Virus record (IMG/VR): IMGVR_UViG_3300023184_004198
Coordinates: 124,001-188,000 of that record
Strand: one strand, 5' to 3'
DNA length: 64,000 bases
A model generated the notes under the pieces. That model saw only the letters and a program-made list of their open reading frames with translations, was not told the origin of the DNA and did no database searches. The position numbers and the translations under genes were made by a program. Positions 42,009-51,732 of the stretch are shown in pieces. Position 1 is the stretch's first letter. Every line of letters starts with the position of its first letter.

Positions 42009-45000
42009 ATGGCACAACCTGTTTGGATCACCCCCGCTGGAAGCCTAGGCATCATACCTGAAGGCATATTTTATCAAAACAGCATGCGGGCCTACGATCC
42101 TGATCCTGCACCAGGCACAGATCTGTATTATCGAGTCATATCAGGTACCTTGCCAGCCGGAATTCAATGCAGTGTCACTGGTTTAATTGCCGGCGTACCT
42201 CAGGCTGTGGCCAGTTTGCAAGGTGTACCACAACCAGTTAATCGCAACGAAACCAGCAAATTTACTCTGCGTGCCTACACTGAAAATGAAGCCACTGGGC
42301 AAATTTTGCGCATTGCGGATCGTACATTTACTCTCACAGTCAGTGGCAATGACATACCTGAATTTACCACGCCTATTGGATCATTCACCGCTAGTAATAC
42401 TGCACAGTTTGTGGGTGCAATTTCCGGCACAGAACTCACTGTAAGTTCTATTACATCAGGCACATTGAGCAATGGCATGGTTTTGCGCGGAACCAATATT
42501 GTTCCTGGAACAACCATTGTTGACACAGGAACAGCCAATGGCGGCACAGGCAAATACACTGTAAATATCAGTCAAACCAATTTAGGTACAACAATCACCG
42601 GCTGGATAGGCACCTATTACGACGGAGACCTTGTTGATCTAACATTTGGGTATACCAGTTTGGATCCCGACGAAACTATCACAGTCAGGCTGGTGTCAGG
42701 TGAATTACCATTGGGGCTGACACTCAGTACTTCAGGGCGTTTGTATGGATACATAGAACCTGCTGCCAATGTAAACAAAACTCCAGGTTACGACGAAACA
42801 CAAATTGACACAGTGCCTTATGACTTTGTAGTGTCTGCTATCAACAAAAATTATCAATTCACACTAGAAGTCACTGATGGGAAAAGCAGTAGTCTAAGAA
42901 CATTTACAATTTATGTTTACAACAAAAGTGATCTCACAGCAGACAATTCAATAGTAACAGGGGACAACACATTTGTCACAACTGATCAAATTGTGGATCG
43001 AAATCCATTCTTGGTCAATGCTGAGCCCAGTTATCTTGGTCGTGTGCGTTCTGACAACTATTTTGCCTATCAATTCAGGGCCAATGACTACGACACTGTG
43101 GATCTCACATATTCAATTGAAGTCAATCAAGGTGAGGGTCTTCCACCAGGATTAACACTGGATCCCACAACTGGTTGGTACTACGGATACATTCCAGATC
43201 AGGGACTGTTGGAAGTTACCTACAGTTTCAACATCACGGTAAGTCAAACTGACAATCCCACAATTACCAGTCAGCCATATCCTTTTACCTTGACCATTGT
43301 GGGCATTACCGACAGTGAATGTACTTGGATAACAGATTCAGATCTTGGTGTACTGGAAAATGGTGCCACAAGTTTGCTCAAAGTTGAAGCCATCAATCGT
43401 GGCAACAAACCACTGAGTTACAGATTAAAGAGTGGTGCATTCAATGAGTTACCACAGGGACTGACATTGTTGCCATCGGGAGAAATTGCCGGACGAGCAA
43501 CATTCAACACGTTTTCAGTGGACTTGGGATTTACCACATTTGATAAATCACAAAGCAACATCACCGGTATTAGTGAAACCACGTTTGACAGCTCATACAC
43601 GTTTACTGTAAACGCTTATGCTGAGGATCCCAGCCAAGATGTTTACAATGTGGCCAGTGTCACTGTGACCAATGGTGGTTCAGGCTACAGCGGCATCAAT
43701 TTACCTACATTGGAATTTTCAGCACCAATTGGTGCTGATGCAGAGCGAGCACAAGGAACGGCAGTGGTTTCAGGAGGTCAAATAGTTGCGGTTAATGTGA
43801 CCAATCAAGGTGCTGGTTACTACAGTCAACCCACACTGACAGTGACTCAAGGATTTGGTGGATCAGGTGCTGTGCTTACGCCGGTGATACAACCCTATGG
43901 CGCCAGAGATGCTATCTCAGTGTTCAAAACTTTCACTATCAGAGTATTCAGAGCTTACAACTATCCATATCAAAACTTGTATGTGGTGGCCATGCCGCCT
44001 GTAAATGACCGTGTACTGTTGGATCAACTGCTGACTAATCAAGAAATTTTTGTACCTGAATACATTTATCGCCCAGACGATGCCAACTTTGGTGTCAGTA
44101 CCGCGGTAAAATACGAGCATGCATATGGATTAGCACCTGAAACAATCGACACTTACGTGGCTAGTTTGTATCTGAATCATTATTGGAAGAATTTGATCTT
44201 AGGATCAATTGAAACAGCCCAGGCATTGGATGCCAATGGCAACGTGGTGTATGAAGTTGTTTACAGTAAAATTGTTGATGACCTTGTAAATTCAGCCGGA
44301 GAAAGTGTGAGCAAAATTGTAAATTTGCCATATTCCATAACTGATCCTGCAGATGGCAGCACAGAAATCACACAGGTGTATCCCAACAGTCTTGTGAACA
44401 TGCGAGATCAAGTTATTGACGTTGTGGGACAAATCAGCACAAAACTACCACTGTGGATGACTTCAAAACAAACCAATGGTCGTGTGTTGGGCTTTACCCC
44501 TGCTTGGGTGATATGTTATGCCAATCCTGGGCGATCAAAACAGATTGCTTATTATATTTCTGAATATTTTGCTCAACAATTAAACAGTGTAGATTTCAAA
44601 GTTGATAGGTATGTGCTAGACCGTACATTGAGCAAAAATTGGAATACCGAAACACAACAATGGACTCCCACAGGAAGTCTTACCACATTTGACTACTATA
44701 ATACCACTGGATATGTTGACATTGGTCTAGTGGAATGTGCTACCAATCTAGCCTATGACGACATCAATTACAGAACCCTGGACGAAATAAATGCCTTGGG
44801 CGGCATAGATGGACTGACCTGGATCGATGATGGTGGTGTAGCACCATTTGGCACCAAGGTAGTAATCAGAGATGGTACACGAATTATTTTTGTCAAACAA
44901 GAAGGATATTTCAATTATAGCACACCAGACGATGCTTGGCAACAATACACTTCTTTGTATGATGAAACTTCATTTGACCCTGTGTTGATAAATGATGCTG

Positions 45001-45839
45001 TGGGCAGTTTTGATAGTGCTTACACCATTCCCGGCGGATATCAAGTGCAATGTTCTGCCACTGTTGCTGCCACAGATCGAATCACTTGTTCAGATACCAC
45101 AGACATGACTGTGGGGGACATTATTTGGTTCACTGGTTCAACATTTGGTGGAGTCGTAGGATTTGGCACCAACAATCAAATTTATTGTGTGTATGACAAA
45201 CCCAATGCCACTCAATTCCGTATTGCAGAAATTGATGGCACTTTTCGAGCATCAATTTCAGGAACCACACTTGTTGTGAGCACTGTGCTCACTGGTGTTT
45301 TACAAGTTGGTGACGTTTTATTAGGAAGCGGAATTGCGGCTGGCACCCAGATCACTGCTTTTGCTAATGGCAGTGGGGGGACAGGAACATACACTGTTAG
45401 CATAAGTCAAACTGTGGCTCTTTCTACTGTGACTGCTACTGCCAGTCCGCCTTTGCAACTGACCACTGCCACAGGAGATATGACCGCTAGTTGGGGCAAT
45501 TACCGCATGGACATTTATAAGATTTCTATACAACCTGCCACAGCAACTGATCCAGCAATTGTTACGTTGAATCCATTACAACAAGTTGCACCCAATGACT
45601 TTGTCACAGTCACGCAAGGTACAACGTACGGTACAGCACAGTTGTACAGACCCACTGCACCAGGATCTGGGCTGAACTTAATAAATTGGCAGTCACTGAT
45701 CACTGTGATCACTGTGATTGGCAATGAAACCACATTTGATGAAGCCAGTATGCAGTTCATTGAGCCTGTGGATATGTACGATACTAGCGATGCACTAGAT
45801 AAATATCTGGTATTTCCCAAACAGAATATTTTGGTATAA
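42009..45839 (+). CDS. Large baseplate/tail structural protein with Ig-like repeats
   Basis: [11 protein letters not shown], repeated LPxGLTL..G, TTFD motifs. Confidence 0.8.
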
Positions 45840-45851
45840 CAAGGATAACCA

Positions 45852-47354
45852 ATGTCAAGTAATATTAACCCAAACAACATTGACGGCACATACCCCATTG
45901 CTGGTCAAGACAATAACTCACAAGGTTTTCGTGACAATTTCACGCAGACCAAAGTTAACTTTCAGTATGCAGCCGATGAAATCAATGACTTGCAGGCCAA
46001 GGGTATTTTCAAAGCAGCACTTACTGGTACCACACTTGACAACAACATGAATGATGCGCTGTTGTATGCTGCCTTGATTCAAGATTTTGCCGCGGTAAAA
46101 ATTGCACCCAGTCCGATTTCAGGCACATTAACATTGAATTATGCATCAGCACACTATCAAAGTTATACCACTGCCTCAGCAGGCAGTGTAACTCTGGCAT
46201 TTTCTAACTTTCCACCGTCGGGTACATATGGTTACATGAAATTGCAATTTACTGTGACCAATGTGAGTTACACATTGACCTTGCCTGCCGCAGTGAGTTT
46301 GGGTATCACAGGTGTGCAAGGTATTAGTCCTGGCACAGCAGGTATTCCCAATACCATTACATTTGGAACTACTGGTGTATATGAATTTGGTTTTGGCAGT
46401 TATGATGGTGGTAGCACCATAACCGTGTTTGACTTGAATCGTCCGTTGACATCCTTAGGAGGTGGTGCAGTCACTGTAGGTAGCCTAACTGCCAGTAGTT
46501 TTGTCAGCGCAACAGGCAATGTGATTGGTGGCAACATCAACTCAGCAGGTCTAGCATCAATCACTGGCAATGTGATTGGTGGCAACATCAACTCAGCAGG
46601 TCTAGCATCAATCACTGGCAACATTCAAGGTGGCAATCTTCGCACAGTTGGCTTGGTCAGTGCCACAGGCAATGTCACAGGTGGCAACATTAATGGATTT
46701 GTCAGACCCTCCGTAGGCACTGCAACAGTTCCTGCATTGTCATTTACCACAGGCCTCAATATGACCACTCCTACAGCAGGTGCTGTAGAGTATGACGGTG
46801 TTACATTCTATGGTACTCCCAATGCCAGCAATCGCGGTGTTTTAAACACATCGCACTTCATGGTCCTGGCCAGCGATTACATTGGCAGCGATACAAGTTC
46901 TGCACAAAAAGTTTTTAACCTAGGCACAGGATCAGCAGGTGCAATCACACTGCCTGCCAGCACCGCTTATTTCATGGAAGCAGTGTACTACATCACACGA
47001 GGAGTGGGATCAAATTCACACACATTGAGCACACTGTTTGCACTGAGTTCAGCATTGACCGGTATTACATACACTGCCGATACTACTAGTACCACTGGTA
47101 ATACCCTGGGTGCTGTGAGTAGAATATATGGTACAGCGGCCACAGCAGTGGCAGTCACTGGTGCCAGTACCAGTACAACTGAAAACATCACTGTGGTAAT
47201 TCGTGGCATTGTTCGTACCAATGCATCTACAACCTTTACACCACAAGTGCAATACAGTTCGGCACCAGGTGGCGCTCCCACATTCTTGACCAACAGTTAT
47301 ATTCGATTGACACCAATCGGTAGCGGTGCTGTGACTTATGTGGGCAACTGGTAA
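45852..47354 (+). CDS. Virion structural protein
   Basis: MSSNINPNNIDGTYPIAGQDNNSQGFRDNF N-terminus; GNxxGGN repeats. Confidence 0.8.
   Translation: MSSNINPNNIDGTYPIAGQDNNSQGFRDNFTQTKVNFQYAADEINDLQAKGIFKAALTGTTLDNNMNDALLYAALIQDFAAVKIAPSPISGTLTLNYASAHYQSYTTASAGSVTLAFSNFPPSGTYGYMKLQFTVTNVSYTLTLPAAVSLGITGVQGISPGTAGIPNTITFGTTGVYEFGFGSYDGGSTITVFDLNRPLTSLGGGAVTVGSLTASSFVSATGNVIGGNINSAGLASITGNVIGGNINSAGLASITGNIQGGNLRTVGLVSATGNVTGGNINGFVRPSVGTATVPALSFTTGLNMTTPTAGAVEYDGVTFYGTPNASNRGVLNTSHFMVLASDYIGSDTSSAQKVFNLGTGSAGAITLPASTAYFMEAVYYITRGVGSNSHTLSTLFALSSALTGITYTADTTSTTGNTLGAVSRIYGTAATAVAVTGASTSTTENITVVIRGIVRTNASTTFTPQVQYSSAPGGAPTFLTNSYIRLTPIGSGAVTYVGNW
46515..46621 (+). repeat. Perfect 51-bp tandem duplication (17 aa)
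   Basis: GGCAATGTGATTGGTGGCAACATCAACTCAGCAGGTCTAGCATCAATCACT twice. Confidence 0.95.
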
Positions 47355-47399
47355 TCCAAACGCCTTGACTTTCATCAGCGGTCTGCTGTATAATATACT

Positions 47400-47636
47400 A
47401 TGGAACATCCGCTGATAGGCCCACTTGATGAATTAACGCTGGAAGAACTCGGCGCCAAAGTCAACGAACTGGGTAAAAAATTGGGCATTGCTGCCCGCAC
47501 TGGAAATGGCCATTTGTGTAATCAAATACGCATGGCCATGGAAAACTATCAAAACATGTATCAAACCCGGTTGCAAGAGAGTTATAAAAAAGCTCAAGGT
47601 GACTCAAACTTCGACGACAAAATAAACATCCAATGA
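47400..47636 (+). CDS. Hypothetical protein
   Basis: Promoter TTGACT-18-TATAAT directly upstream. Confidence 0.75.
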   Translation: MEHPLIGPLDELTLEELGAKVNELGKKLGIAARTGNGHLCNQIRMAMENYQNMYQTRLQESYKKAQGDSNFDDKINIQ

Positions 47637-48235
47637 ACGTTAGACTACAATACGACCTAGATTTCCTGGCAGGAATCTACTACGACGACCGATTGCAATT
47701 AAACAGTTACTCAGTGAGCATGAGTTTGTTGACCAAAACCATGGATGCTGCCAACACTAACATTGCCATGGATCGACTGAAAATGTTCATGCACGGTGAA
47801 TTGGCCAATACTGTGTTCGTTAACCAAGCACACAGAGAACGTGCTGAAATGTTGCAGATCATGGGTGTGAATGTGACCACATTGCCCGAAGAACCAGTAG
47901 ACCAGATTGTGGGCATGATGCTATACTACAAGCTCAATGCCATCATGGAAGGACGCATGAGTGTGACCAGATTGGATCTCATGAGTGCATTAGGCGATTC
48001 AGTTTGGTATCAACATGACGCTGATGAAGACTCACCAGGTCCATTCAGAGCCGAAGGCTGGTGGCATGAACCCACTGTGCAACATGACACTGTGGCTCAG
48101 GGAGATGCTGGAGACAACGTGGTCAAAGTCATACCCAATGCCTGGATTGAATACGGCTTGACCTGGCCCGAAAACACACCTGAACCCACTGCCAACACTG
48201 TGGTATTTGCCAATTTCTCAAAAAATGAAGACTAA
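47633..48235 (+). CDS. Conserved hypothetical protein upstream of the DnaE fragment
   Basis: 200 aa, LPEEPVDQ..WW. Confidence 0.8.
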   Translation: MNVRLQYDLDFLAGIYYDDRLQLNSYSVSMSLLTKTMDAANTNIAMDRLKMFMHGELANTVFVNQAHRERAEMLQIMGVNVTTLPEEPVDQIVGMMLYYKLNAIMEGRMSVTRLDLMSALGDSVWYQHDADEDSPGPFRAEGWWHEPTVQHDTVAQGDAGDNVVKVIPNAWIEYGLTWPENTPEPTANTVVFANFSKNED

Positions 48236-48737
48236 TCAATACGGCGAAATTATATATAACGAAAGTGATCTTGTGAACATGATCATGAGTGGCGCTACTA
48301 TAGATGGCTTGAAAGGCATGCTGGTTGAGTCAGGCGTGAATTTAGAAACAGCGTCAGCATATTTAGAGCAGGTGCCGGAACTAATTGAATACTCATTTAC
48401 AGACATGACTGTGGAAGAGTTTGATGTAATGAAACAGAACTCCTGGCACATGCCTGAAGAGTACAAACAGTTGGACATTGCCGAATATGTGTTGAGCCTG
48501 TGCGACTCAGATGCTCGACTGCAACGCTGTGGTCAAGAACTGTTGTTGTTTCAAGAACGCAACTTGTTTGATTTGTTGCGTTATCTCAAATATCTTGTGG
48601 ATACGTTGACAGCCAACCACATGATTTGGGGAGTAGGACGTGGGTCCAGTGTGGCCAGTTACGTGTTGTACTTGTTGGGTGTGCATAGAATTGACAGTAT
48701 GTTCTATGATTTAGATCCCACAGAGTTCTTGCGTTAA
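48225..48737 (+). CDS. DNA polymerase III alpha (DnaE)-like fragment, about 170 aa
   Basis: RCGQELLLF..WGVGRGSSVASYVLYLLGVHRID; ends before the PDxDxD motif. Confidence 0.85.
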   Translation: MKTNQYGEIIYNESDLVNMIMSGATIDGLKGMLVESGVNLETASAYLEQVPELIEYSFTDMTVEEFDVMKQNSWHMPEEYKQLDIAEYVLSLCDSDARLQRCGQELLLFQERNLFDLLRYLKYLVDTLTANHMIWGVGRGSSVASYVLYLLGVHRIDSMFYDLDPTEFLR

Positions 48738-48758: not shown

Positions 48759-48986
48759 ATGACCAAAGAAGTATACAAAAGTGCTCGTGGCAAACCTGTG
48801 GACATGGGAGCATTGCGTTTAAAAAATGAAAAAGAACGTGCAGTAGGCAATATGAAAGTGAATGCTCGTGGTGACGCTGTGGATGAAGGCAATCACCCAG
48901 TTCAAAGCCGACCACAACAGGTGCATAAACAATATCAACAACAGATTCAAGCAAAAACTTCTTCACACAAATGGGATTTAGATTAA
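48759..48986 (+). CDS. Conserved hypothetical late protein
   Basis: GKPVDMGAL..AVGNMKVNARGD; TAAATA and AGGAG upstream. Confidence 0.75.
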   Translation: MTKEVYKSARGKPVDMGALRLKNEKERAVGNMKVNARGDAVDEGNHPVQSRPQQVHKQYQQQIQAKTSSHKWDLD

Positions 48987-49363
48987 TGAAAGCAGCATAC
49001 AGCGCACATAGAGTTAGCAAGTTACAAGCATTAAATGATTCAGTGTTAGTAGAAGATATGGTATTTGATGAACGCCTTTCAAATGGCGGTATTGTGCTGT
49101 TAAACGACAATGGCAAGAGTTCAGGTATTCGTCCACGCTGGGGGCGAGTGTATGCCATTGGTCCTGAGCAGCAAGATGTGCGGGTAGGTGAGTGGATTTG
49201 TGTGGCACACGGACGTTGGACACGTGGCCTGGACATTGAAGATGACAAAGGCAAACGTACCATTCGCAAAATTGACCCCAAAGATATCTTGATGTCAGCA
49301 GATGAAAAACCATCAGATGTCACATTCTCTGATGCTATTCACGTTGAACGCAAAGAACGATGA
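48986..49363 (+). CDS. groES: Co-chaperonin GroES-like
   Basis: ALNDSVLV..GGIVL..GRVYAIGP..VRVGE. Confidence 0.8.
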   Translation: MKAAYSAHRVSKLQALNDSVLVEDMVFDERLSNGGIVLLNDNGKSSGIRPRWGRVYAIGPEQQDVRVGEWICVAHGRWTRGLDIEDDKGKRTIRKIDPKDILMSADEKPSDVTFSDAIHVERKER

Positions 49364-49596: not shown

Positions 49597-50520
49597 ATGA
49601 AACAGTTATGGACAGAAAAATATCGGCCCAACACTTTGGCGGATTATGTTTTTCGTGACCAAGCACAGCGAGAGCAGGTAGAGGGTTGGGTCAAATCTGG
49701 CGCTATCCCACACTTGCTGTTCTCTGGATCACCAGGTGTGGGCAAGACCACCTTGGCCAAGATCCTGATACATGAACTAGGCATTGATCCGTTTGATGTC
49801 ATGGAAATCAATGCGTCAAGAGAAAACAACATTGATACTATTCGTGCCAAGATCACAGGCTTTGTGCAGACCATGCCGTTTGGTGATTTTAAAATTGTGT
49901 TGTTGGACGAAGCAGATTACATCACTCCCAACGGCCAAGCAGCCTTGCGTGGTGTAATGGAAACCTACTCCAGCACTGCCAGATTCATACTCACTTGCAA
50001 TTATCCCAATCGTGTTATCCCGGCCTTGCACAGCAGATGTCAAGGATTCCACATTGAGAAAGTGGATGTCACAGAATTCACTGCTAGAATGGCCACCATC
50101 TTGGTAACAGAGAGTGTGGAGTTTGACCTGGATACCTTGGACAGTTATGTCAAGGCCACATATCCAGACCTGCGCAAGTGTATCAACTTGTGCCAAATGA
50201 ACACAGTGGATGGCAGGTTGTCAGCCCCTCATGGGGACGAAGGTGGCGCAACATCTGACTATTTGTTGGCGGCTGTGGACATGTTCAAACGTGGCAAAAT
50301 ACGTGAAGCCAGAACATTGTTGTGCCAAAATGTGCGCAGTGAGGACATGGAAGCCCTGTTCCGCTGGATGTACGACAACTTGGACTTGTGGGGCACAACA
50401 CCCGAACGCCAGGACCAAGCCATTATAATCATACGCAACAGTGCGGCCAATAACAGCCTTGTGGCGGATCACGAAATCAACTTGAGCGCAACCATTGTAG
50501 AACTGTGCAACATTCAATGA
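49597..50520 (+). CDS. Sliding clamp loader ATPase (RFC small subunit/T4 gp44-like)
   Basis: WTEKYRP, GSPGVGKTT, NAS, LDEAD, SRC. Confidence 0.95.
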   Translation: MKQLWTEKYRPNTLADYVFRDQAQREQVEGWVKSGAIPHLLFSGSPGVGKTTLAKILIHELGIDPFDVMEINASRENNIDTIRAKITGFVQTMPFGDFKIVLLDEADYITPNGQAALRGVMETYSSTARFILTCNYPNRVIPALHSRCQGFHIEKVDVTEFTARMATILVTESVEFDLDTLDSYVKATYPDLRKCINLCQMNTVDGRLSAPHGDEGGATSDYLLAAVDMFKRGKIREARTLLCQNVRSEDMEALFRWMYDNLDLWGTTPERQDQAIIIIRNSAANNSLVADHEINLSATIVELCNIQ

Positions 50521-50807
50521 GATACTTACTTTTAACCTATTACAAAAAACCCGACGGCAAGATTGACGAAGTCATGGCCGTGGCCAAAAACTTGAAAAAA
50601 CGCGACATTGCAACTTGCAACGTCATACTTGACTTTAAAAAATTAGAAGTGATCAAAGCCAGTATGTCGGGCACAGATGTACCAAAAGATTTTGACCGCA
50701 TTGCAGGGTATTACCATCAACACTATGCTGCCACCATAGAGCGATTGTTCAACGAGAATGGCTACGAAGTTGAAGTCAACAAACCCCAACAAGATGCGGC
50801 TGGATGA
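50517..50807 (+). CDS. Hypothetical protein
   Basis: MRYLLLTYYKKPDGKIDE, coupled. Confidence 0.7.
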   Translation: MRYLLLTYYKKPDGKIDEVMAVAKNLKKRDIATCNVILDFKKLEVIKASMSGTDVPKDFDRIAGYYHQHYAATIERLFNENGYEVEVNKPQQDAAG

Positions 50808-51732
50808 TTTAGATGGTTTACACATTGAACTGACCAATCTGTGTACGTTGAAATGTCCAGGTTGCCTGAGAACACAGTTGATTAAAAAATGGCCTCGCCA
50901 TTGGAAAAATTACAGTTTAGATTTGGATGTTGTTGCAAAATTCTTAGACGTTGATTTGCAGGGCAAAACCATTACCTTGTGTGGCAACACAGGCGATTCT
51001 ATATATCATCCCAAGTTTCATGACTTTGTGGCATATTTTAAAAATCGCGGTGCCCAGCTTCGAGTGTTTACCAATGGTAGTTATCGCAATCAGTCTTGGT
51101 GGGACACCACTGTTTCTTATTTGGACAGCGCAGATACAGTGATTTTTAGCGTGGATGGTCTGCCAGAAAATTTTACACAATATCGAATCAATGCAGATTG
51201 GCAATCAATTTTGATTGGCATGCAGGCTTGTATACAAGCATCTTGCAAAACTGTGTGGAAATACATTCCGTTCAATTTCAATGAAAATGACATTGCTGCC
51301 GCAGAACAACTCAGTCAAAACATGGGCTTTGATGTTTTTAAAATTGAACAAAGCAGCAGATTTGACGAACGCAATGGAGTAGATTATCAGTTGATGTCTT
51401 TCATGCCCAGCGGCAATCAACACATAGATGCAAGATATCAACATCAAGCAGAATGGAAAAACTCAAGGCTCACAATCCAGATTGATCCTGTTTGCAATGA
51501 TCAAAGAAGTCATTACATTTCGGCCAACGGGTTTTACAGTCCCTGTTGTTTTGTATCTGACTATGCATTTTATTACAAGACAGAATTTGGTAAAAACAAA
51601 AAAATGTACAACATTGCAGACCGTACACTCACCGGGTTGTTTCAACAAACAGAATTCAATGAGTTTTACAATAATTTACACGATCACGCAGTTTGTCAAT
51701 TTAGTTGTCCCGCTACACAGGAAAGAAAATGA
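50794..51732 (+). CDS. Radical SAM protein with C-terminal Twitch-like domain
   Basis: CTLKCPGC, CGNTGD, FTNG, SVDG, PCC. Confidence 0.9.
   Translation: MRLDDLDGLHIELTNLCTLKCPGCLRTQLIKKWPRHWKNYSLDLDVVAKFLDVDLQGKTITLCGNTGDSIYHPKFHDFVAYFKNRGAQLRVFTNGSYRNQSWWDTTVSYLDSADTVIFSVDGLPENFTQYRINADWQSILIGMQACIQASCKTVWKYIPFNFNENDIAAAEQLSQNMGFDVFKIEQSSRFDERNGVDYQLMSFMPSGNQHIDARYQHQAEWKNSRLTIQIDPVCNDQRSHYISANGFYSPCCFVSDYAFYYKTEFGKNKKMYNIADRTLTGLFQQTEFNEFYNNLHDHAVCQFSCPATQERK

What the first reader, a model, noticed from the sequence alone, without database searches (positions are those of the whole stretch)
47400..48737. DnaE split just before its catalytic aspartates, with no intein
Seen: a ~170-aa ORF with GRGSS and LGVHRID stops at DPTEFLR, where DnaE continues to PDxDxD. 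There is no PHP domain and no intein motif. A new late gene follows, so this is not a frameshift. Clamp loader and GroES are nearby. Inference: a two-gene C-family replicase assembled in trans, with 47633 as a possible accessory subunit.
Basis: partly seen in the sequence, partly recalled or inferred. Interest (0 to 1): 0.6.

Follow-up and report, generated by a model that had tools for sequence, protein, structure and literature searches.

The report
Half of a split phage polymerase
The ORF is the front half of a stripped-down bacterial-type (Pol III alpha) DNA polymerase core, and this uncultured freshwater jumbo phage encodes the back half, with the catalytic aspartates, about 98 kb away; the arrangement was predicted by computer in 2021 and is still untested at the bench.

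Summary
Window 48225-48737(+) encodes a 170-aa protein with the GRGSS motif. It ends at ...EFLR, which aligns with E. coli Pol III alpha residue ~393, just before Asp401/Asp403. It has no PHP domain and no intein.

The complementary ORF exists on the same phage contig, 98.2 kb upstream and outside the window. It is 192 aa, begins MSADIDIDV, and keeps counterparts of K553/D555, RPG and Y754/K758/H760.

Both halves are under purifying selection. They co-occur in about 95 cultured phages and in 5 of 5 near-complete relatives. A natural 375-aa fusion exists. The two halves are predicted to bind (ipSAE 0.91; best control 0.10).

The "two genes, assembled in trans" reading is therefore supported.
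- "Replicase": complete relatives carry a ~900-aa family-B polymerase.
- ORF 47633 as an accessory subunit: it is lineage-specific.
- The "late gene": the cluster sits behind a conserved sigma70-like promoter.

Iyer et al. 2021 (PMC7824862) already described this split minimal Pol III in group 2.2 jumbo phages. This is a new member of a known but biochemically untested kind.

The parts
47365..47394 (+). sigma70-like promoter (TTGACT-18 nt-TATAAT) in the 45-bp gap after the tail-fibre-like gene; probably drives the gene cluster that holds the N-unit
   Evidence: 11 of 12 consensus positions match. A TTGAnn-N16-19-TAnnnT motif sits at the same place in 70 of 77 related loci although the spacers differ. 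The -10 hexamer ends about 6 nt before the ATG of the first gene.
47400..47636 (+). orf78, a small conserved protein of unknown function; its stop overlaps the next start (ATGA)
   Evidence: Found upstream of the N-unit in 77 of 80 IMG/VR loci. Weak profile matches to Paride_0085 (prob 70) and GAP32_322 (prob 78). No Pfam or PHROG hit.
   Evidence: No Pfam or PHROG hit. Found in 74 of 80 IMG/VR loci but not by tblastn in Paride, 121Q, GAP32 or Phosso. BLASTP against Paride_0086 gives nothing; a profile gives prob 75 over 110 columns. The Atlas shows only viral hypothetical clusters, plus a weak PTPS lead at 0.85.
48225..48737 (+). N-unit of the split minimal Pol III alpha (170 aa; alternative TTG start at 48207). 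Residues 61-170 correspond to E. coli alpha 271-393: palm strand P-beta-1, the GS motif R139-G140-S141 and the following helix. It ends in an invariant EFLR just before the DxD strand.
   Evidence: Family matches. PDB profile and structure matches. All 80 related loci end EFLR*. dN/dS 0.10-0.19. More than 8000 metagenomic homologues.
48759..48986 (+). orf75 (phrog_14844), a small protein that follows the N-unit in distant phages as well
   Evidence: PHROG E 2e-8. tblastn hits directly downstream of the N-unit in Paride, 121Q and GAP32. Profile matches: Paride_0088 prob 99.6, Phosso_139 prob 94.
48971..49363 (+). GroES / T4 gp31-like co-chaperonin
   Evidence: Pfam Cpn10 E 1e-4; phrog_931 E 1e-13. 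Syntenic in Paride, 121Q, GAP32, Phosso and Slicko01.
49597..50520 (+). gp44/RFC-like clamp-loader large subunit
   Evidence: phrog_168 E 2e-81; Pfam AAA and DNA_pol3_delta2.

Best explanation
Window 48225-48737 encodes the N-terminal unit of a two-polypeptide, stripped-down C-family (Pol III alpha-like) polymerase core.

What each half supplies:
- The N-unit (170 aa) supplies the rigid first part of the palm: strand P-beta-1, the nucleotide-binding GS motif R139-G140-S141 and the helix after it.
- The C-unit (192 aa; G000:C1:73442-74020, same strand, 98.2 kb upstream, outside the window) supplies the metal-binding strand (D4, D6), a thumb-like beta-hairpin, the small palm (K67, D69), the RPG template contact (R137-P138) and the Y164/K168/H170 loop. 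In E. coli that loop stacks on the incoming dNTP and excludes rNTPs.

How it works (inferred): neither chain has a complete active site. The two are inferred to associate non-covalently, with no intein and no splicing, by pairing strand P-beta-1 with the DxD strand, so rebuilding the Pol-beta-like nucleotidyltransferase fold. The product is most likely a small dNTP-using auxiliary DNA polymerase (repair, gap filling or one strand) working beside the phage's T4-like family-B replicase. It is probably not the replicase itself.

Shown: homology, the position of the seam, conservation, co-occurrence, a natural fusion.
Inferred: binding, catalysis, biological role.
For: - C-unit found in the own genome. 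It matches phrog_11778 end to end at E 3e-51.
- In 81 diverse C-units, D4, D6, K67, D69 and P138 are invariant, and H35, R137, K140, K167 and H170 nearly so.
- The C-unit profile hits E. coli alpha 2HNH at E 3e-6: positions 54-140 on 538-641 (KFD555, RPG) and 151-180 on 739-769 (YGFNKSH).
- Structure models: C-unit pLDDT 95, residues 1-192 on E. coli 399-~810 (Z 8.1), Taq 460-841 (Z 9.6) and PolC 970-1299 (Z 10.0). N-unit residues 61-170 on E. coli 271-393 (Z 8.7-9.4).
- A 2026 preprint on E. coli Pol III treats 271-393 as a rigid sub-part of the large palm. It lists R362/G363/S364, D401/D403, Y754/F756/N757/H760 and R639-G641 as the dNTP and template contacts, and K553 as essential. All have counterparts split between the two units.
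- Co-occurrence: 93 phage records hold the N-unit and 96 the C-unit, with near-identical genus tallies. Five of five near-complete IMG/VR relatives chosen by their N-unit hold exactly one C-unit, 89-105 kb away. The 141-kb phage Slicko01 has both, 11 kb apart.
- A natural 375-aa fusion, P0169, joins ...KEFIK to ADFDID through a 9-residue linker.
- Purifying selection: dN/dS 0.10-0.19 (N) and 0.04-0.11 (C). 80 of 80 N-units end EFLR*, and 79 of 80 C-units start like MSADIDID.
- Complex prediction: ipSAE 0.91 against a best control of 0.10. That mark was reached by 58 of 80 solved complexes and 2 of 110 mismatched pairs. Runs share at least 96% of contacts; partner pLDDT 91. N-unit 134-144 touches C-unit 2-10.
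- Family-B polymerase in relatives.
- The same conclusion was published by Iyer et al. 2021.
Against: - No biochemical or expression evidence exists; no RNA run holds the region.
- The complex score may only echo intrachain contacts of solved DnaE structures.
- E. coli Arg390, where an R390A mutant loses 27-fold in efficiency, aligns with an invariant Glu (E167) in the N-unit.
- The E. coli 642-738 stretch that carries Arg709, Arg710, Lys714 and Lys715 is reduced to about 10 residues.
- About 85 residues between the DxD strand and the small palm (the helical thumb) are absent.
- No clamp-binding, OB or HhH domain was found, so DNA binding and processivity are uncertain.
- The two genes lie in different transcription units about 98 kb apart.
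- The own contig is only 61% complete, and no family-B polymerase was found on it.
Confidence: 0.8

Rival explanations
1. The heterodimer forms as described but is no longer a templated DNA polymerase. It would be a specialised nucleotidyltransferase, for example non-templated tailing, nucleotide addition to another substrate, or a regulatory nucleotide-binding module.
For: Most of the thumb and index finger, the (HhH)2, clamp-binding and OB domains are missing. Arg390 is replaced by Glu. A separate family-B replicase is present in relatives.
Against: Residues specific to templated dNTP use are kept: RPG (template contact), Y164 (base stacking), H170 (the steric gate against rNTPs) and K67 (primer phosphate). 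The thumb-like beta-hairpin is retained in the model.
Confidence: 0.13
2. The two-gene enzyme is the phage's main replicase.
For: The N-unit lies in a cluster with the clamp loader. In Paride the C-unit lies beside helicase and primase genes. No family-B polymerase was found on the own, 61%-complete contig.
Against: Five of five near-complete close relatives and Paride, 121Q and GAP32 all carry a ~900-1010-aa family-B polymerase. The minimal enzyme has no proofreading domain and no recognisable clamp-binding part.
Confidence: 0.04
3. The N-unit acts alone, for example as a decoy or inhibitor that mimics part of the host Pol III alpha, and its link with the C-unit is incidental.
For: It is a stand-alone gene in a different operon from the C-unit. 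Its first 60 residues have no DnaE counterpart.
Against: Strict co-occurrence with the C-unit. A natural fusion exists. An extensive interface is predicted. The catalytic-site residues R139, G140 and S141 are invariant.
Confidence: 0.02
4. A decaying gene fragment, a frameshifted gene or an intein-split gene.
For: Annotators of phage CBB called the homologue a truncated Pol III alpha.
Against: dN/dS is 0.10-0.19 and the stop position is identical in 80 of 80 loci. There are thousands of intact 170-aa homologues. No other PF07733 piece appears in any frame of the contig. No DIDID-coding sequence occurs in the window. There is no Hint or intein hit and no room for one: the N-unit ends at E. coli ~393 and the C-unit starts at ~399.
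Confidence: 0.01

Closest known systems
Split 'minimal' DNA polymerase III alpha of group 2.2 jumbo phages (Iyer, Anantharaman, Krishnan, Burroughs & Aravind 2021, Viruses 13:63, PMC7824862)
   Same: A stand-alone N-terminal NTP-binding unit and a C-terminal Mg2+/template-binding unit, encoded by distant genes beside a family-B polymerase and an RFC-like clamp loader. The window's protein is 32-45% identical to the units of RaK2-like, PA5oct-like, Atu_ph07-like and Phosso phages, in the same gene order.
   Different: It comes from an uncultured freshwater clade. The paper, as far as I read it, does not state these.
E. coli / Thermus Pol III alpha (DnaE) and Geobacillus PolC (PDB 2HNH, 5FKV, 3E0D, 3F2B)
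   Same: The Pol-beta-like palm with the GS motif, the Asp triad, K553, RPG and the YxFxKSH loop. Structural Z scores are 8-10 over both units.
   Different: Two chains of 170 + 192 aa instead of one of ~1160 aa. No PHP domain. The helical thumb and most of the index finger are missing. Nothing lies beyond E. coli ~785-810: no little finger/(HhH)2, clamp-binding, OB or tau-binding domain. Glu stands in place of Arg390.
Intein-split DnaE of cyanobacteria (DnaE-n/DnaE-c joined by a split intein; from my own knowledge, not tested here)
   Same: A C-family polymerase encoded by two distant genes.
   Different: There the halves carry split-intein parts, are spliced into one full-length chain, and the break lies far downstream in the fingers. 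Here there is no intein, the break lies inside the catalytic palm fold, and assembly must be non-covalent.
Full-length phage DnaE (group 3.2 jumbo phages such as Bacillus phage G; phrog_405)
   Same: Weak family-level similarity of both units to phrog_405.
   Different: Those are single ~1190-aa host-like enzymes with a PHP domain.
P0169, a 375-aa metagenomic protein (ENA contig, L183:1066-2193)
   Same: Holds an N-unit and a C-unit in one chain; its C-part is 41% identical to the own C-unit.
   Different: Fused through a 9-residue linker. It is known from a single 2.4-kb contig. In the tree it nests (SH-aLRT 96) among four stand-alone C-units, so the fusion is probably secondary. The tree is rooted only at its midpoint.

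Membership tests
C-family DNA polymerase catalytic core (Pol III alpha / DnaE, Pfam PF07733) | GS (Arg-Gly-Ser) nucleotide-binding motif on palm strand P-beta-1 | tested here: met
   GRGSS at N-unit 138-142 is invariant in 46 relatives and in 4 distant phages. It aligns with E. coli R362-G363-S364. PF07733 scores above its cut-off.
C-family DNA polymerase catalytic core (Pol III alpha / DnaE, Pfam PF07733) | Three catalytic aspartates (E. coli D401, D403, D555) in the same polypeptide | tested here: not met
   The flagged ORF ends at E. coli ~393 and has none of them. They are D4, D6 and D69 of a second protein encoded 98 kb away, invariant in 81 relatives.
C-family DNA polymerase catalytic core (Pol III alpha / DnaE, Pfam PF07733) | N-terminal PHP domain | tested here: not met
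   No PF02811 hit in the ORF, nor anywhere on the own contig or in four near-complete relatives, while 14 of 14 control genomes gave a hit.
C-family DNA polymerase catalytic core (Pol III alpha / DnaE, Pfam PF07733) | Full thumb and fingers, plus clamp-binding, OB and tau-binding C-terminal domains | tested here: not met
   C-unit residues 1-192 span E. coli 399-~810 with only ~186 aligned residues. E. coli 642-738 is reduced to ~10 residues, and 409-537 to ~43. PF17657 gives no significant hit.
C-family DNA polymerase catalytic core (Pol III alpha / DnaE, Pfam PF07733) | Template-directed dNTP polymerisation | not testable with these tools
   Only residue conservation is available (Y164, K168, H170, R137-P138, K67).
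Split minimal Pol III alpha of group 2.2 jumbo phages (Iyer et al. 2021) | Stand-alone N-terminal NTP-binding unit of ~170 aa | tested here: met
   170 aa; matches phrog_11127 end to end; orthologous and syntenic with the units of 121Q, GAP32, Paride and Phosso.
Split minimal Pol III alpha of group 2.2 jumbo phages (Iyer et al. 2021) | Separate C-terminal Mg2+/template-binding unit encoded by a distant gene of the same genome | tested here: met
   G000:C1:73442-74020, 192 aa, phrog_11778 E 3e-51, 98.2 kb from the N-unit.
Split minimal Pol III alpha of group 2.2 jumbo phages (Iyer et al. 2021) | Accompanied by a family-B polymerase and an RFC-like clamp loader | tested here: inconclusive
   The clamp loader is present in the window. 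No family-B polymerase is on the own 61%-complete contig. It is present in five of five near-complete close relatives.
Split minimal Pol III alpha of group 2.2 jumbo phages (Iyer et al. 2021) | The two units physically reconstitute one enzyme | tested here: inconclusive
   A model supports binding (ipSAE 0.91 against a best control of 0.10) and a natural fusion exists. No experiment has been done.
Intein-split DnaE | Split-intein halves flanking the break | tested here: not met
   No intein or Hint Pfam hit. The N-unit ends EFLR and the C-unit starts MSAD, which leaves no room for an intein.

The most novel reading that the evidence does not exclude
The 170 + 192-aa pair is a catalytically active, dNTP-selective DNA polymerase: by far the smallest C-family polymerase, and one whose active site is built across two chains. 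It would work without a PHP domain, helical thumb, index finger, clamp-binding domain or OB domain, as a second polymerase in a T4-like replisome. Encoding the halves in separate transcription units would make activity depend on both being expressed. It could also stand as a living model of an ancestral Pol III core, as Iyer et al. suggest.
Probability: 0.4. Interest if true: 0.75.

Novelty: new member of a known kind. Interest (0 to 1): 0.45.

Why it matters
If the pair is active, it defines the minimal catalytic unit of the bacterial replicative polymerase family. It would also show that a Pol-beta-fold active site can be assembled from two polypeptides cut between the nucleotide-binding motif and the metal-binding strand. 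It would mean that many large T4-like phages, including thousands of freshwater metagenomic relatives, run two unrelated polymerase families side by side. Cultured relatives that infect laboratory strains exist (PA5oct/Paride, 121Q, RaK2), so the question can be tested directly. The kind has been in print since 2021, so the value here is confirmation, sharper anatomy and a ready experimental design rather than discovery.

Tried and rejected
- Six-frame Pfam scans with PF07733 and PF17657 did not find the C-unit in the own contig or in three complete relatives. For a while this made the split look unsupported. Only a 13-bit PF17657 hit in 121Q/GAP32 and the paper led to it. This was a false negative of the family models.
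- Single-sequence searches of the PDB with either unit found nothing. The N-unit profile was only marginal (E 0.6).
- Foldseek E-values for both models were weak. VIA-align was needed to get ranges.
- Alignment A5 (the fusion plus both unit families, meant for folding the whole module) was misaligned by MAFFT and dropped.
- ORF 47633 as a partner: rejected as an obligate subunit.
- DnaQ-like exonuclease: none on the own incomplete contig.
- T4-type late promoter TATAAATA: none near the locus.
- RNA evidence: no RNA run holds the region.
- Literature after 2021 on the split enzyme: none found. The PA5oct omics paper does not mention the genes.
- Pseudogene, frameshift, intein and lone-decoy readings were rejected (see the rival explanations).
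Full report
**Setting.** The window is bases 124001-188000 of a 212.6-kb IMG/VR viral contig judged 61% complete. Near-identical DNA occurs in lake and freshwater metagenomes from several independent studies. No RNA run holds it. Around the finding lie tail-fibre-like genes, a GroES/gp31-like gene, a gp44/RFC-like clamp loader and a radical-SAM/SPASM gene. The closest cultured relatives are jumbo myoviruses: the PA5oct/Paride group, the RaK2/121Q/GAP32/CBB group, RsoM2USA, Xoo-sp13, Atu_ph07 and Phosso.

- The ORF at 48207-48737 most likely starts at the ATG at 48225, giving 170 aa. The 120 best-scoring metagenomic homologues listed are nearly all 170 aa.
- It contains WGVGRGSS...LGVHRID and stops after DLDPTEFLR.
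- It passes the Pfam threshold for DNA_pol3_alpha, but only over profile positions 25-94 of 260.
- It matches a 171-position phage family, phrog_11127, from end to end (E 1e-40).
- A profile of 46 relatives puts GRGS on E. coli Arg362-Gly363-Ser364 and the C-terminus on residue ~392.
- An AlphaFold model (pLDDT 79) aligns residues 61-170 with E. coli alpha 271-393 (Z 8.7-9.4, rmsd about 3 A, 100-104 residues). It aligns with the equivalent parts of M. tuberculosis DnaE1, Thermus DnaE and PolC.
- The first 60 residues have no DnaE counterpart.
- There is no PHP or intein hit in the ORF. There is no PHP domain anywhere on the contig or in four near-complete relatives.

**It is not a decaying fragment.**
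- More than 8000 metagenomic proteins match it.
- All 80 IMG/VR loci fetched (57-89% identical) end with EFLR and a stop.
- dN/dS against six relatives is 0.10-0.19.
- The gene sits in the same order in phages as distant as Paride, 121Q, GAP32, Phosso and the 141-kb Slicko01: small ORFs, N-unit, a phrog_14844 gene, a GroES-like gene, then the clamp loader.

**The missing half exists.**
- Pfam scans of the own contig and of three complete relatives at first found no second DnaE piece.
- Iyer et al. 2021 (PMC7824862) report that 'group 2.2' jumbo phages carry a minimal Pol III alpha split into an N-terminal NTP-binding protein and a C-terminal Mg2+/template-binding protein. The two are encoded by distant genes, beside a family-B polymerase.
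- Sub-threshold PF17657 hits in 121Q and GAP32 fall in 212- and 216-aa ORFs that begin ...RTDIDIDF.
- With the 121Q protein as query, the own contig gives a 192-aa ORF at G000:C1:73442-74020 (L020:1498-2076). It begins MSADIDIDVP.
- This ORF lies on the same strand, 98.2 kb upstream of the N-unit and outside the window.

**Anatomy of the C-unit.**
- It matches phrog_11778 end to end (E 3e-51).
- Across 81 representatives sharing only 28-64% identity, D4, D6, K67, D69 and P138 are invariant. H35, R137, K140, K167 and H170 are nearly so.
- The profile hits E. coli alpha at E 3e-6. Positions 54-140 fall on 538-641 (KFD555...FRPG) and 151-180 on 739-769 (YGFNKSHSAAYA).
- The AlphaFold model is confident (pLDDT 95). 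It aligns over its whole length with E. coli 399-~810 (Z 8.1), Thermus 460-841 (Z 9.6) and PolC 970-1299 (Z 10.0). Unrelated folds start at Z 3.3.

**Where the cut falls.** The seam lies between E. coli residues 393 and 399. A 2026 preprint on E. coli Pol III cryo-EM structures supports this reading:
- It treats 271-393 as the rigid N-terminal part of the large palm.
- It describes the part that carries Asp401 and Asp403 as mobile.
- The dNTP contacts it lists are Arg362/Gly363/Ser364, Asp401/Asp403 and Tyr754/Phe756/Asn757/His760. His760 is the steric gate against rNTPs.
- The template contacts it lists are Arg639-Gly641, and Lys553 is essential.

Counterparts of all of these are shared out between the two phage proteins: R139-G140-S141 in the N-unit, and D4/D6, K67/D69, R137-P138, Y164/F166 and H170 in the C-unit.

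Other elements have no counterpart:
- E. coli 642-738, which carries Arg709, Arg710, Lys714 and Lys715.
- About 85 residues of 409-537, the helical thumb. A beta-hairpin at C-unit 22-40 remains. I infer, but did not show, that it equals the thumb strands.
- Everything beyond ~785-810.

Arg390 aligns with an invariant Glu (E167).

**Evidence that the two halves belong together.**
1. Phyletic pattern. 93 phage records hold the N-unit and 96 the C-unit, with near-identical genus tallies. At least 27 accessions appear in both displayed lists.
2. Five near-complete IMG/VR genomes (331-364 kb), picked only because they carry an N-unit, each hold exactly one C-unit, 89-105 kb away. Slicko01 has both, 11 kb apart.
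3. A natural fusion. P0169 (375 aa, one 2.4-kb ENA contig) reads ...GVGRGSS...KEFIK-DNKEGIYNI-ADFDIDT.... In a quick maximum-likelihood tree its C-part groups (SH-aLRT 96) with four stand-alone C-units. The fusion therefore looks secondary, though the tree is rooted only at its midpoint.
4. Selection on the C-unit. dN/dS is 0.04-0.11, and 79 of 80 loci start like MSADIDID.
5. Predicted complex. ipSAE is 0.91, with a best control of 0.10. That mark was reached by 58 of 80 solved complexes and 2 of 110 mismatched pairs. The runs agree in at least 96% of contacts, and the partner pLDDT is 91. About 155 contacts are predicted, and the IWGVGRGSS strand (N 134-144) lies against the DIDID strand (C 2-10). 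The model may simply recall intrachain DnaE contacts, so this shows likeness to the intact fold, not binding.

**What is not supported.**
- 'Replicase'. Paride, 121Q and GAP32 carry family-B polymerases (~1010-aa frames in 121Q and GAP32; two frames in Paride), and five of five near-complete close relatives carry a family-B polymerase of 889-912 aa. The own contig shows none, but it is incomplete.
- ORF 47633 (200 aa) as an accessory subunit:
  - It has no family match.
  - It is conserved in 74 of 80 freshwater-clade loci.
  - A profile gives a modest match to Paride_0086 (prob 75).
  - It is absent beside the N-unit in 121Q, GAP32, Phosso and Slicko01, which have both halves.
  - The Atlas offers only viral hypothetical clusters and a weak PTPS lead.
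- 'Late gene'. No T4-type TATAAATA motif lies near. Instead, a TTGACT-18-TATAAT element at 47365-47394 fills the gap after the tail-fibre-like gene. It recurs in 70 of 77 related loci despite divergent spacers. This points to a host-sigma70-type transcription unit running orf78, orf200, N-unit, orf75, GroES-like and onward. Overlapping stops and starts (ATGA at 47633; the ATG at 48225 lies inside the end of orf200) suggest translational coupling.

**Most likely mechanism.** The two chains associate non-covalently and rebuild the Pol-beta-like fold, with a composite active site. The N-unit brings the triphosphate-binding GS loop. The C-unit brings the metals, the primer and template contacts, and the sugar gate. 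Because the stacking tyrosine and the steric-gate histidine are retained, I favour a template-dependent, dNTP-using auxiliary polymerase working beside the family-B replicase, as Iyer et al. proposed. My probabilities are about 0.9 that this is the N-half of the split enzyme, about 0.8 that the halves bind, and about 0.5-0.6 that the pair polymerises DNA. Its role (repair, gap filling, one strand) is open.

**Novelty.** The kind is already in print as a computational prediction, and I found no later experimental work. This locus is a new member from an abundant uncultured freshwater clade.

**Housekeeping.**

Noticed in passing
window 47365-47402: The conserved sigma70-like -10 hexamer ends only about 6 nt before the ATG of orf78 in most of 70 related loci. 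The first gene of the cluster may therefore be translated from a leaderless or nearly leaderless mRNA.
   Followed up: partly
window 48759-48986; L001:4478-4819; L022:3336-3797: A small protein (phrog_14844) directly follows the N-unit in the freshwater clade, Paride, 121Q, GAP32 and probably Phosso (profile prob 99.6 and 94). It is more widely linked to the N-unit than ORF 47633, so it is a better candidate for a third partner. Its function is unknown.
   Followed up: partly
window 47633-48235: The only named lead for orf200 is a weak Atlas feature match (0.85) to 6-pyruvoyl-tetrahydropterin synthase (QueD-like) clusters. This may be chance.
   Followed up: no
window 50758-51732: A radical-SAM protein with a SPASM domain (phrog_21308) lies just downstream of the clamp loader. 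Its substrate is unknown.
   Followed up: no
L014/L015/L018 (Paride 88906-92683): In Paride the family-B polymerase matches fall in two separate frames (825 aa and 379 aa). That replicase may therefore also be encoded in two pieces.
   Followed up: no
L020:436-1146 (own contig, upstream of the C-unit): A 236-aa C2H2 zinc-finger protein (phrog_11058) precedes the C-unit in the own genome, in 121Q and in GAP32. In the own genome an extra 117-aa ORF is inserted between them.
   Followed up: no
L184/L185 (Alishewanella phage Slicko01, 141 kb): A phage well below jumbo size carries both units, 11 kb apart, with the same N-unit, small ORF, GroES order. The system is therefore not confined to genomes over 200 kb.
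   Followed up: partly
window 42009-47354: Two large, repeat-rich, tail-fibre-like proteins (1276 and 500 aa) lie immediately upstream. The replication-type cluster starts abruptly after them.
   Followed up: no
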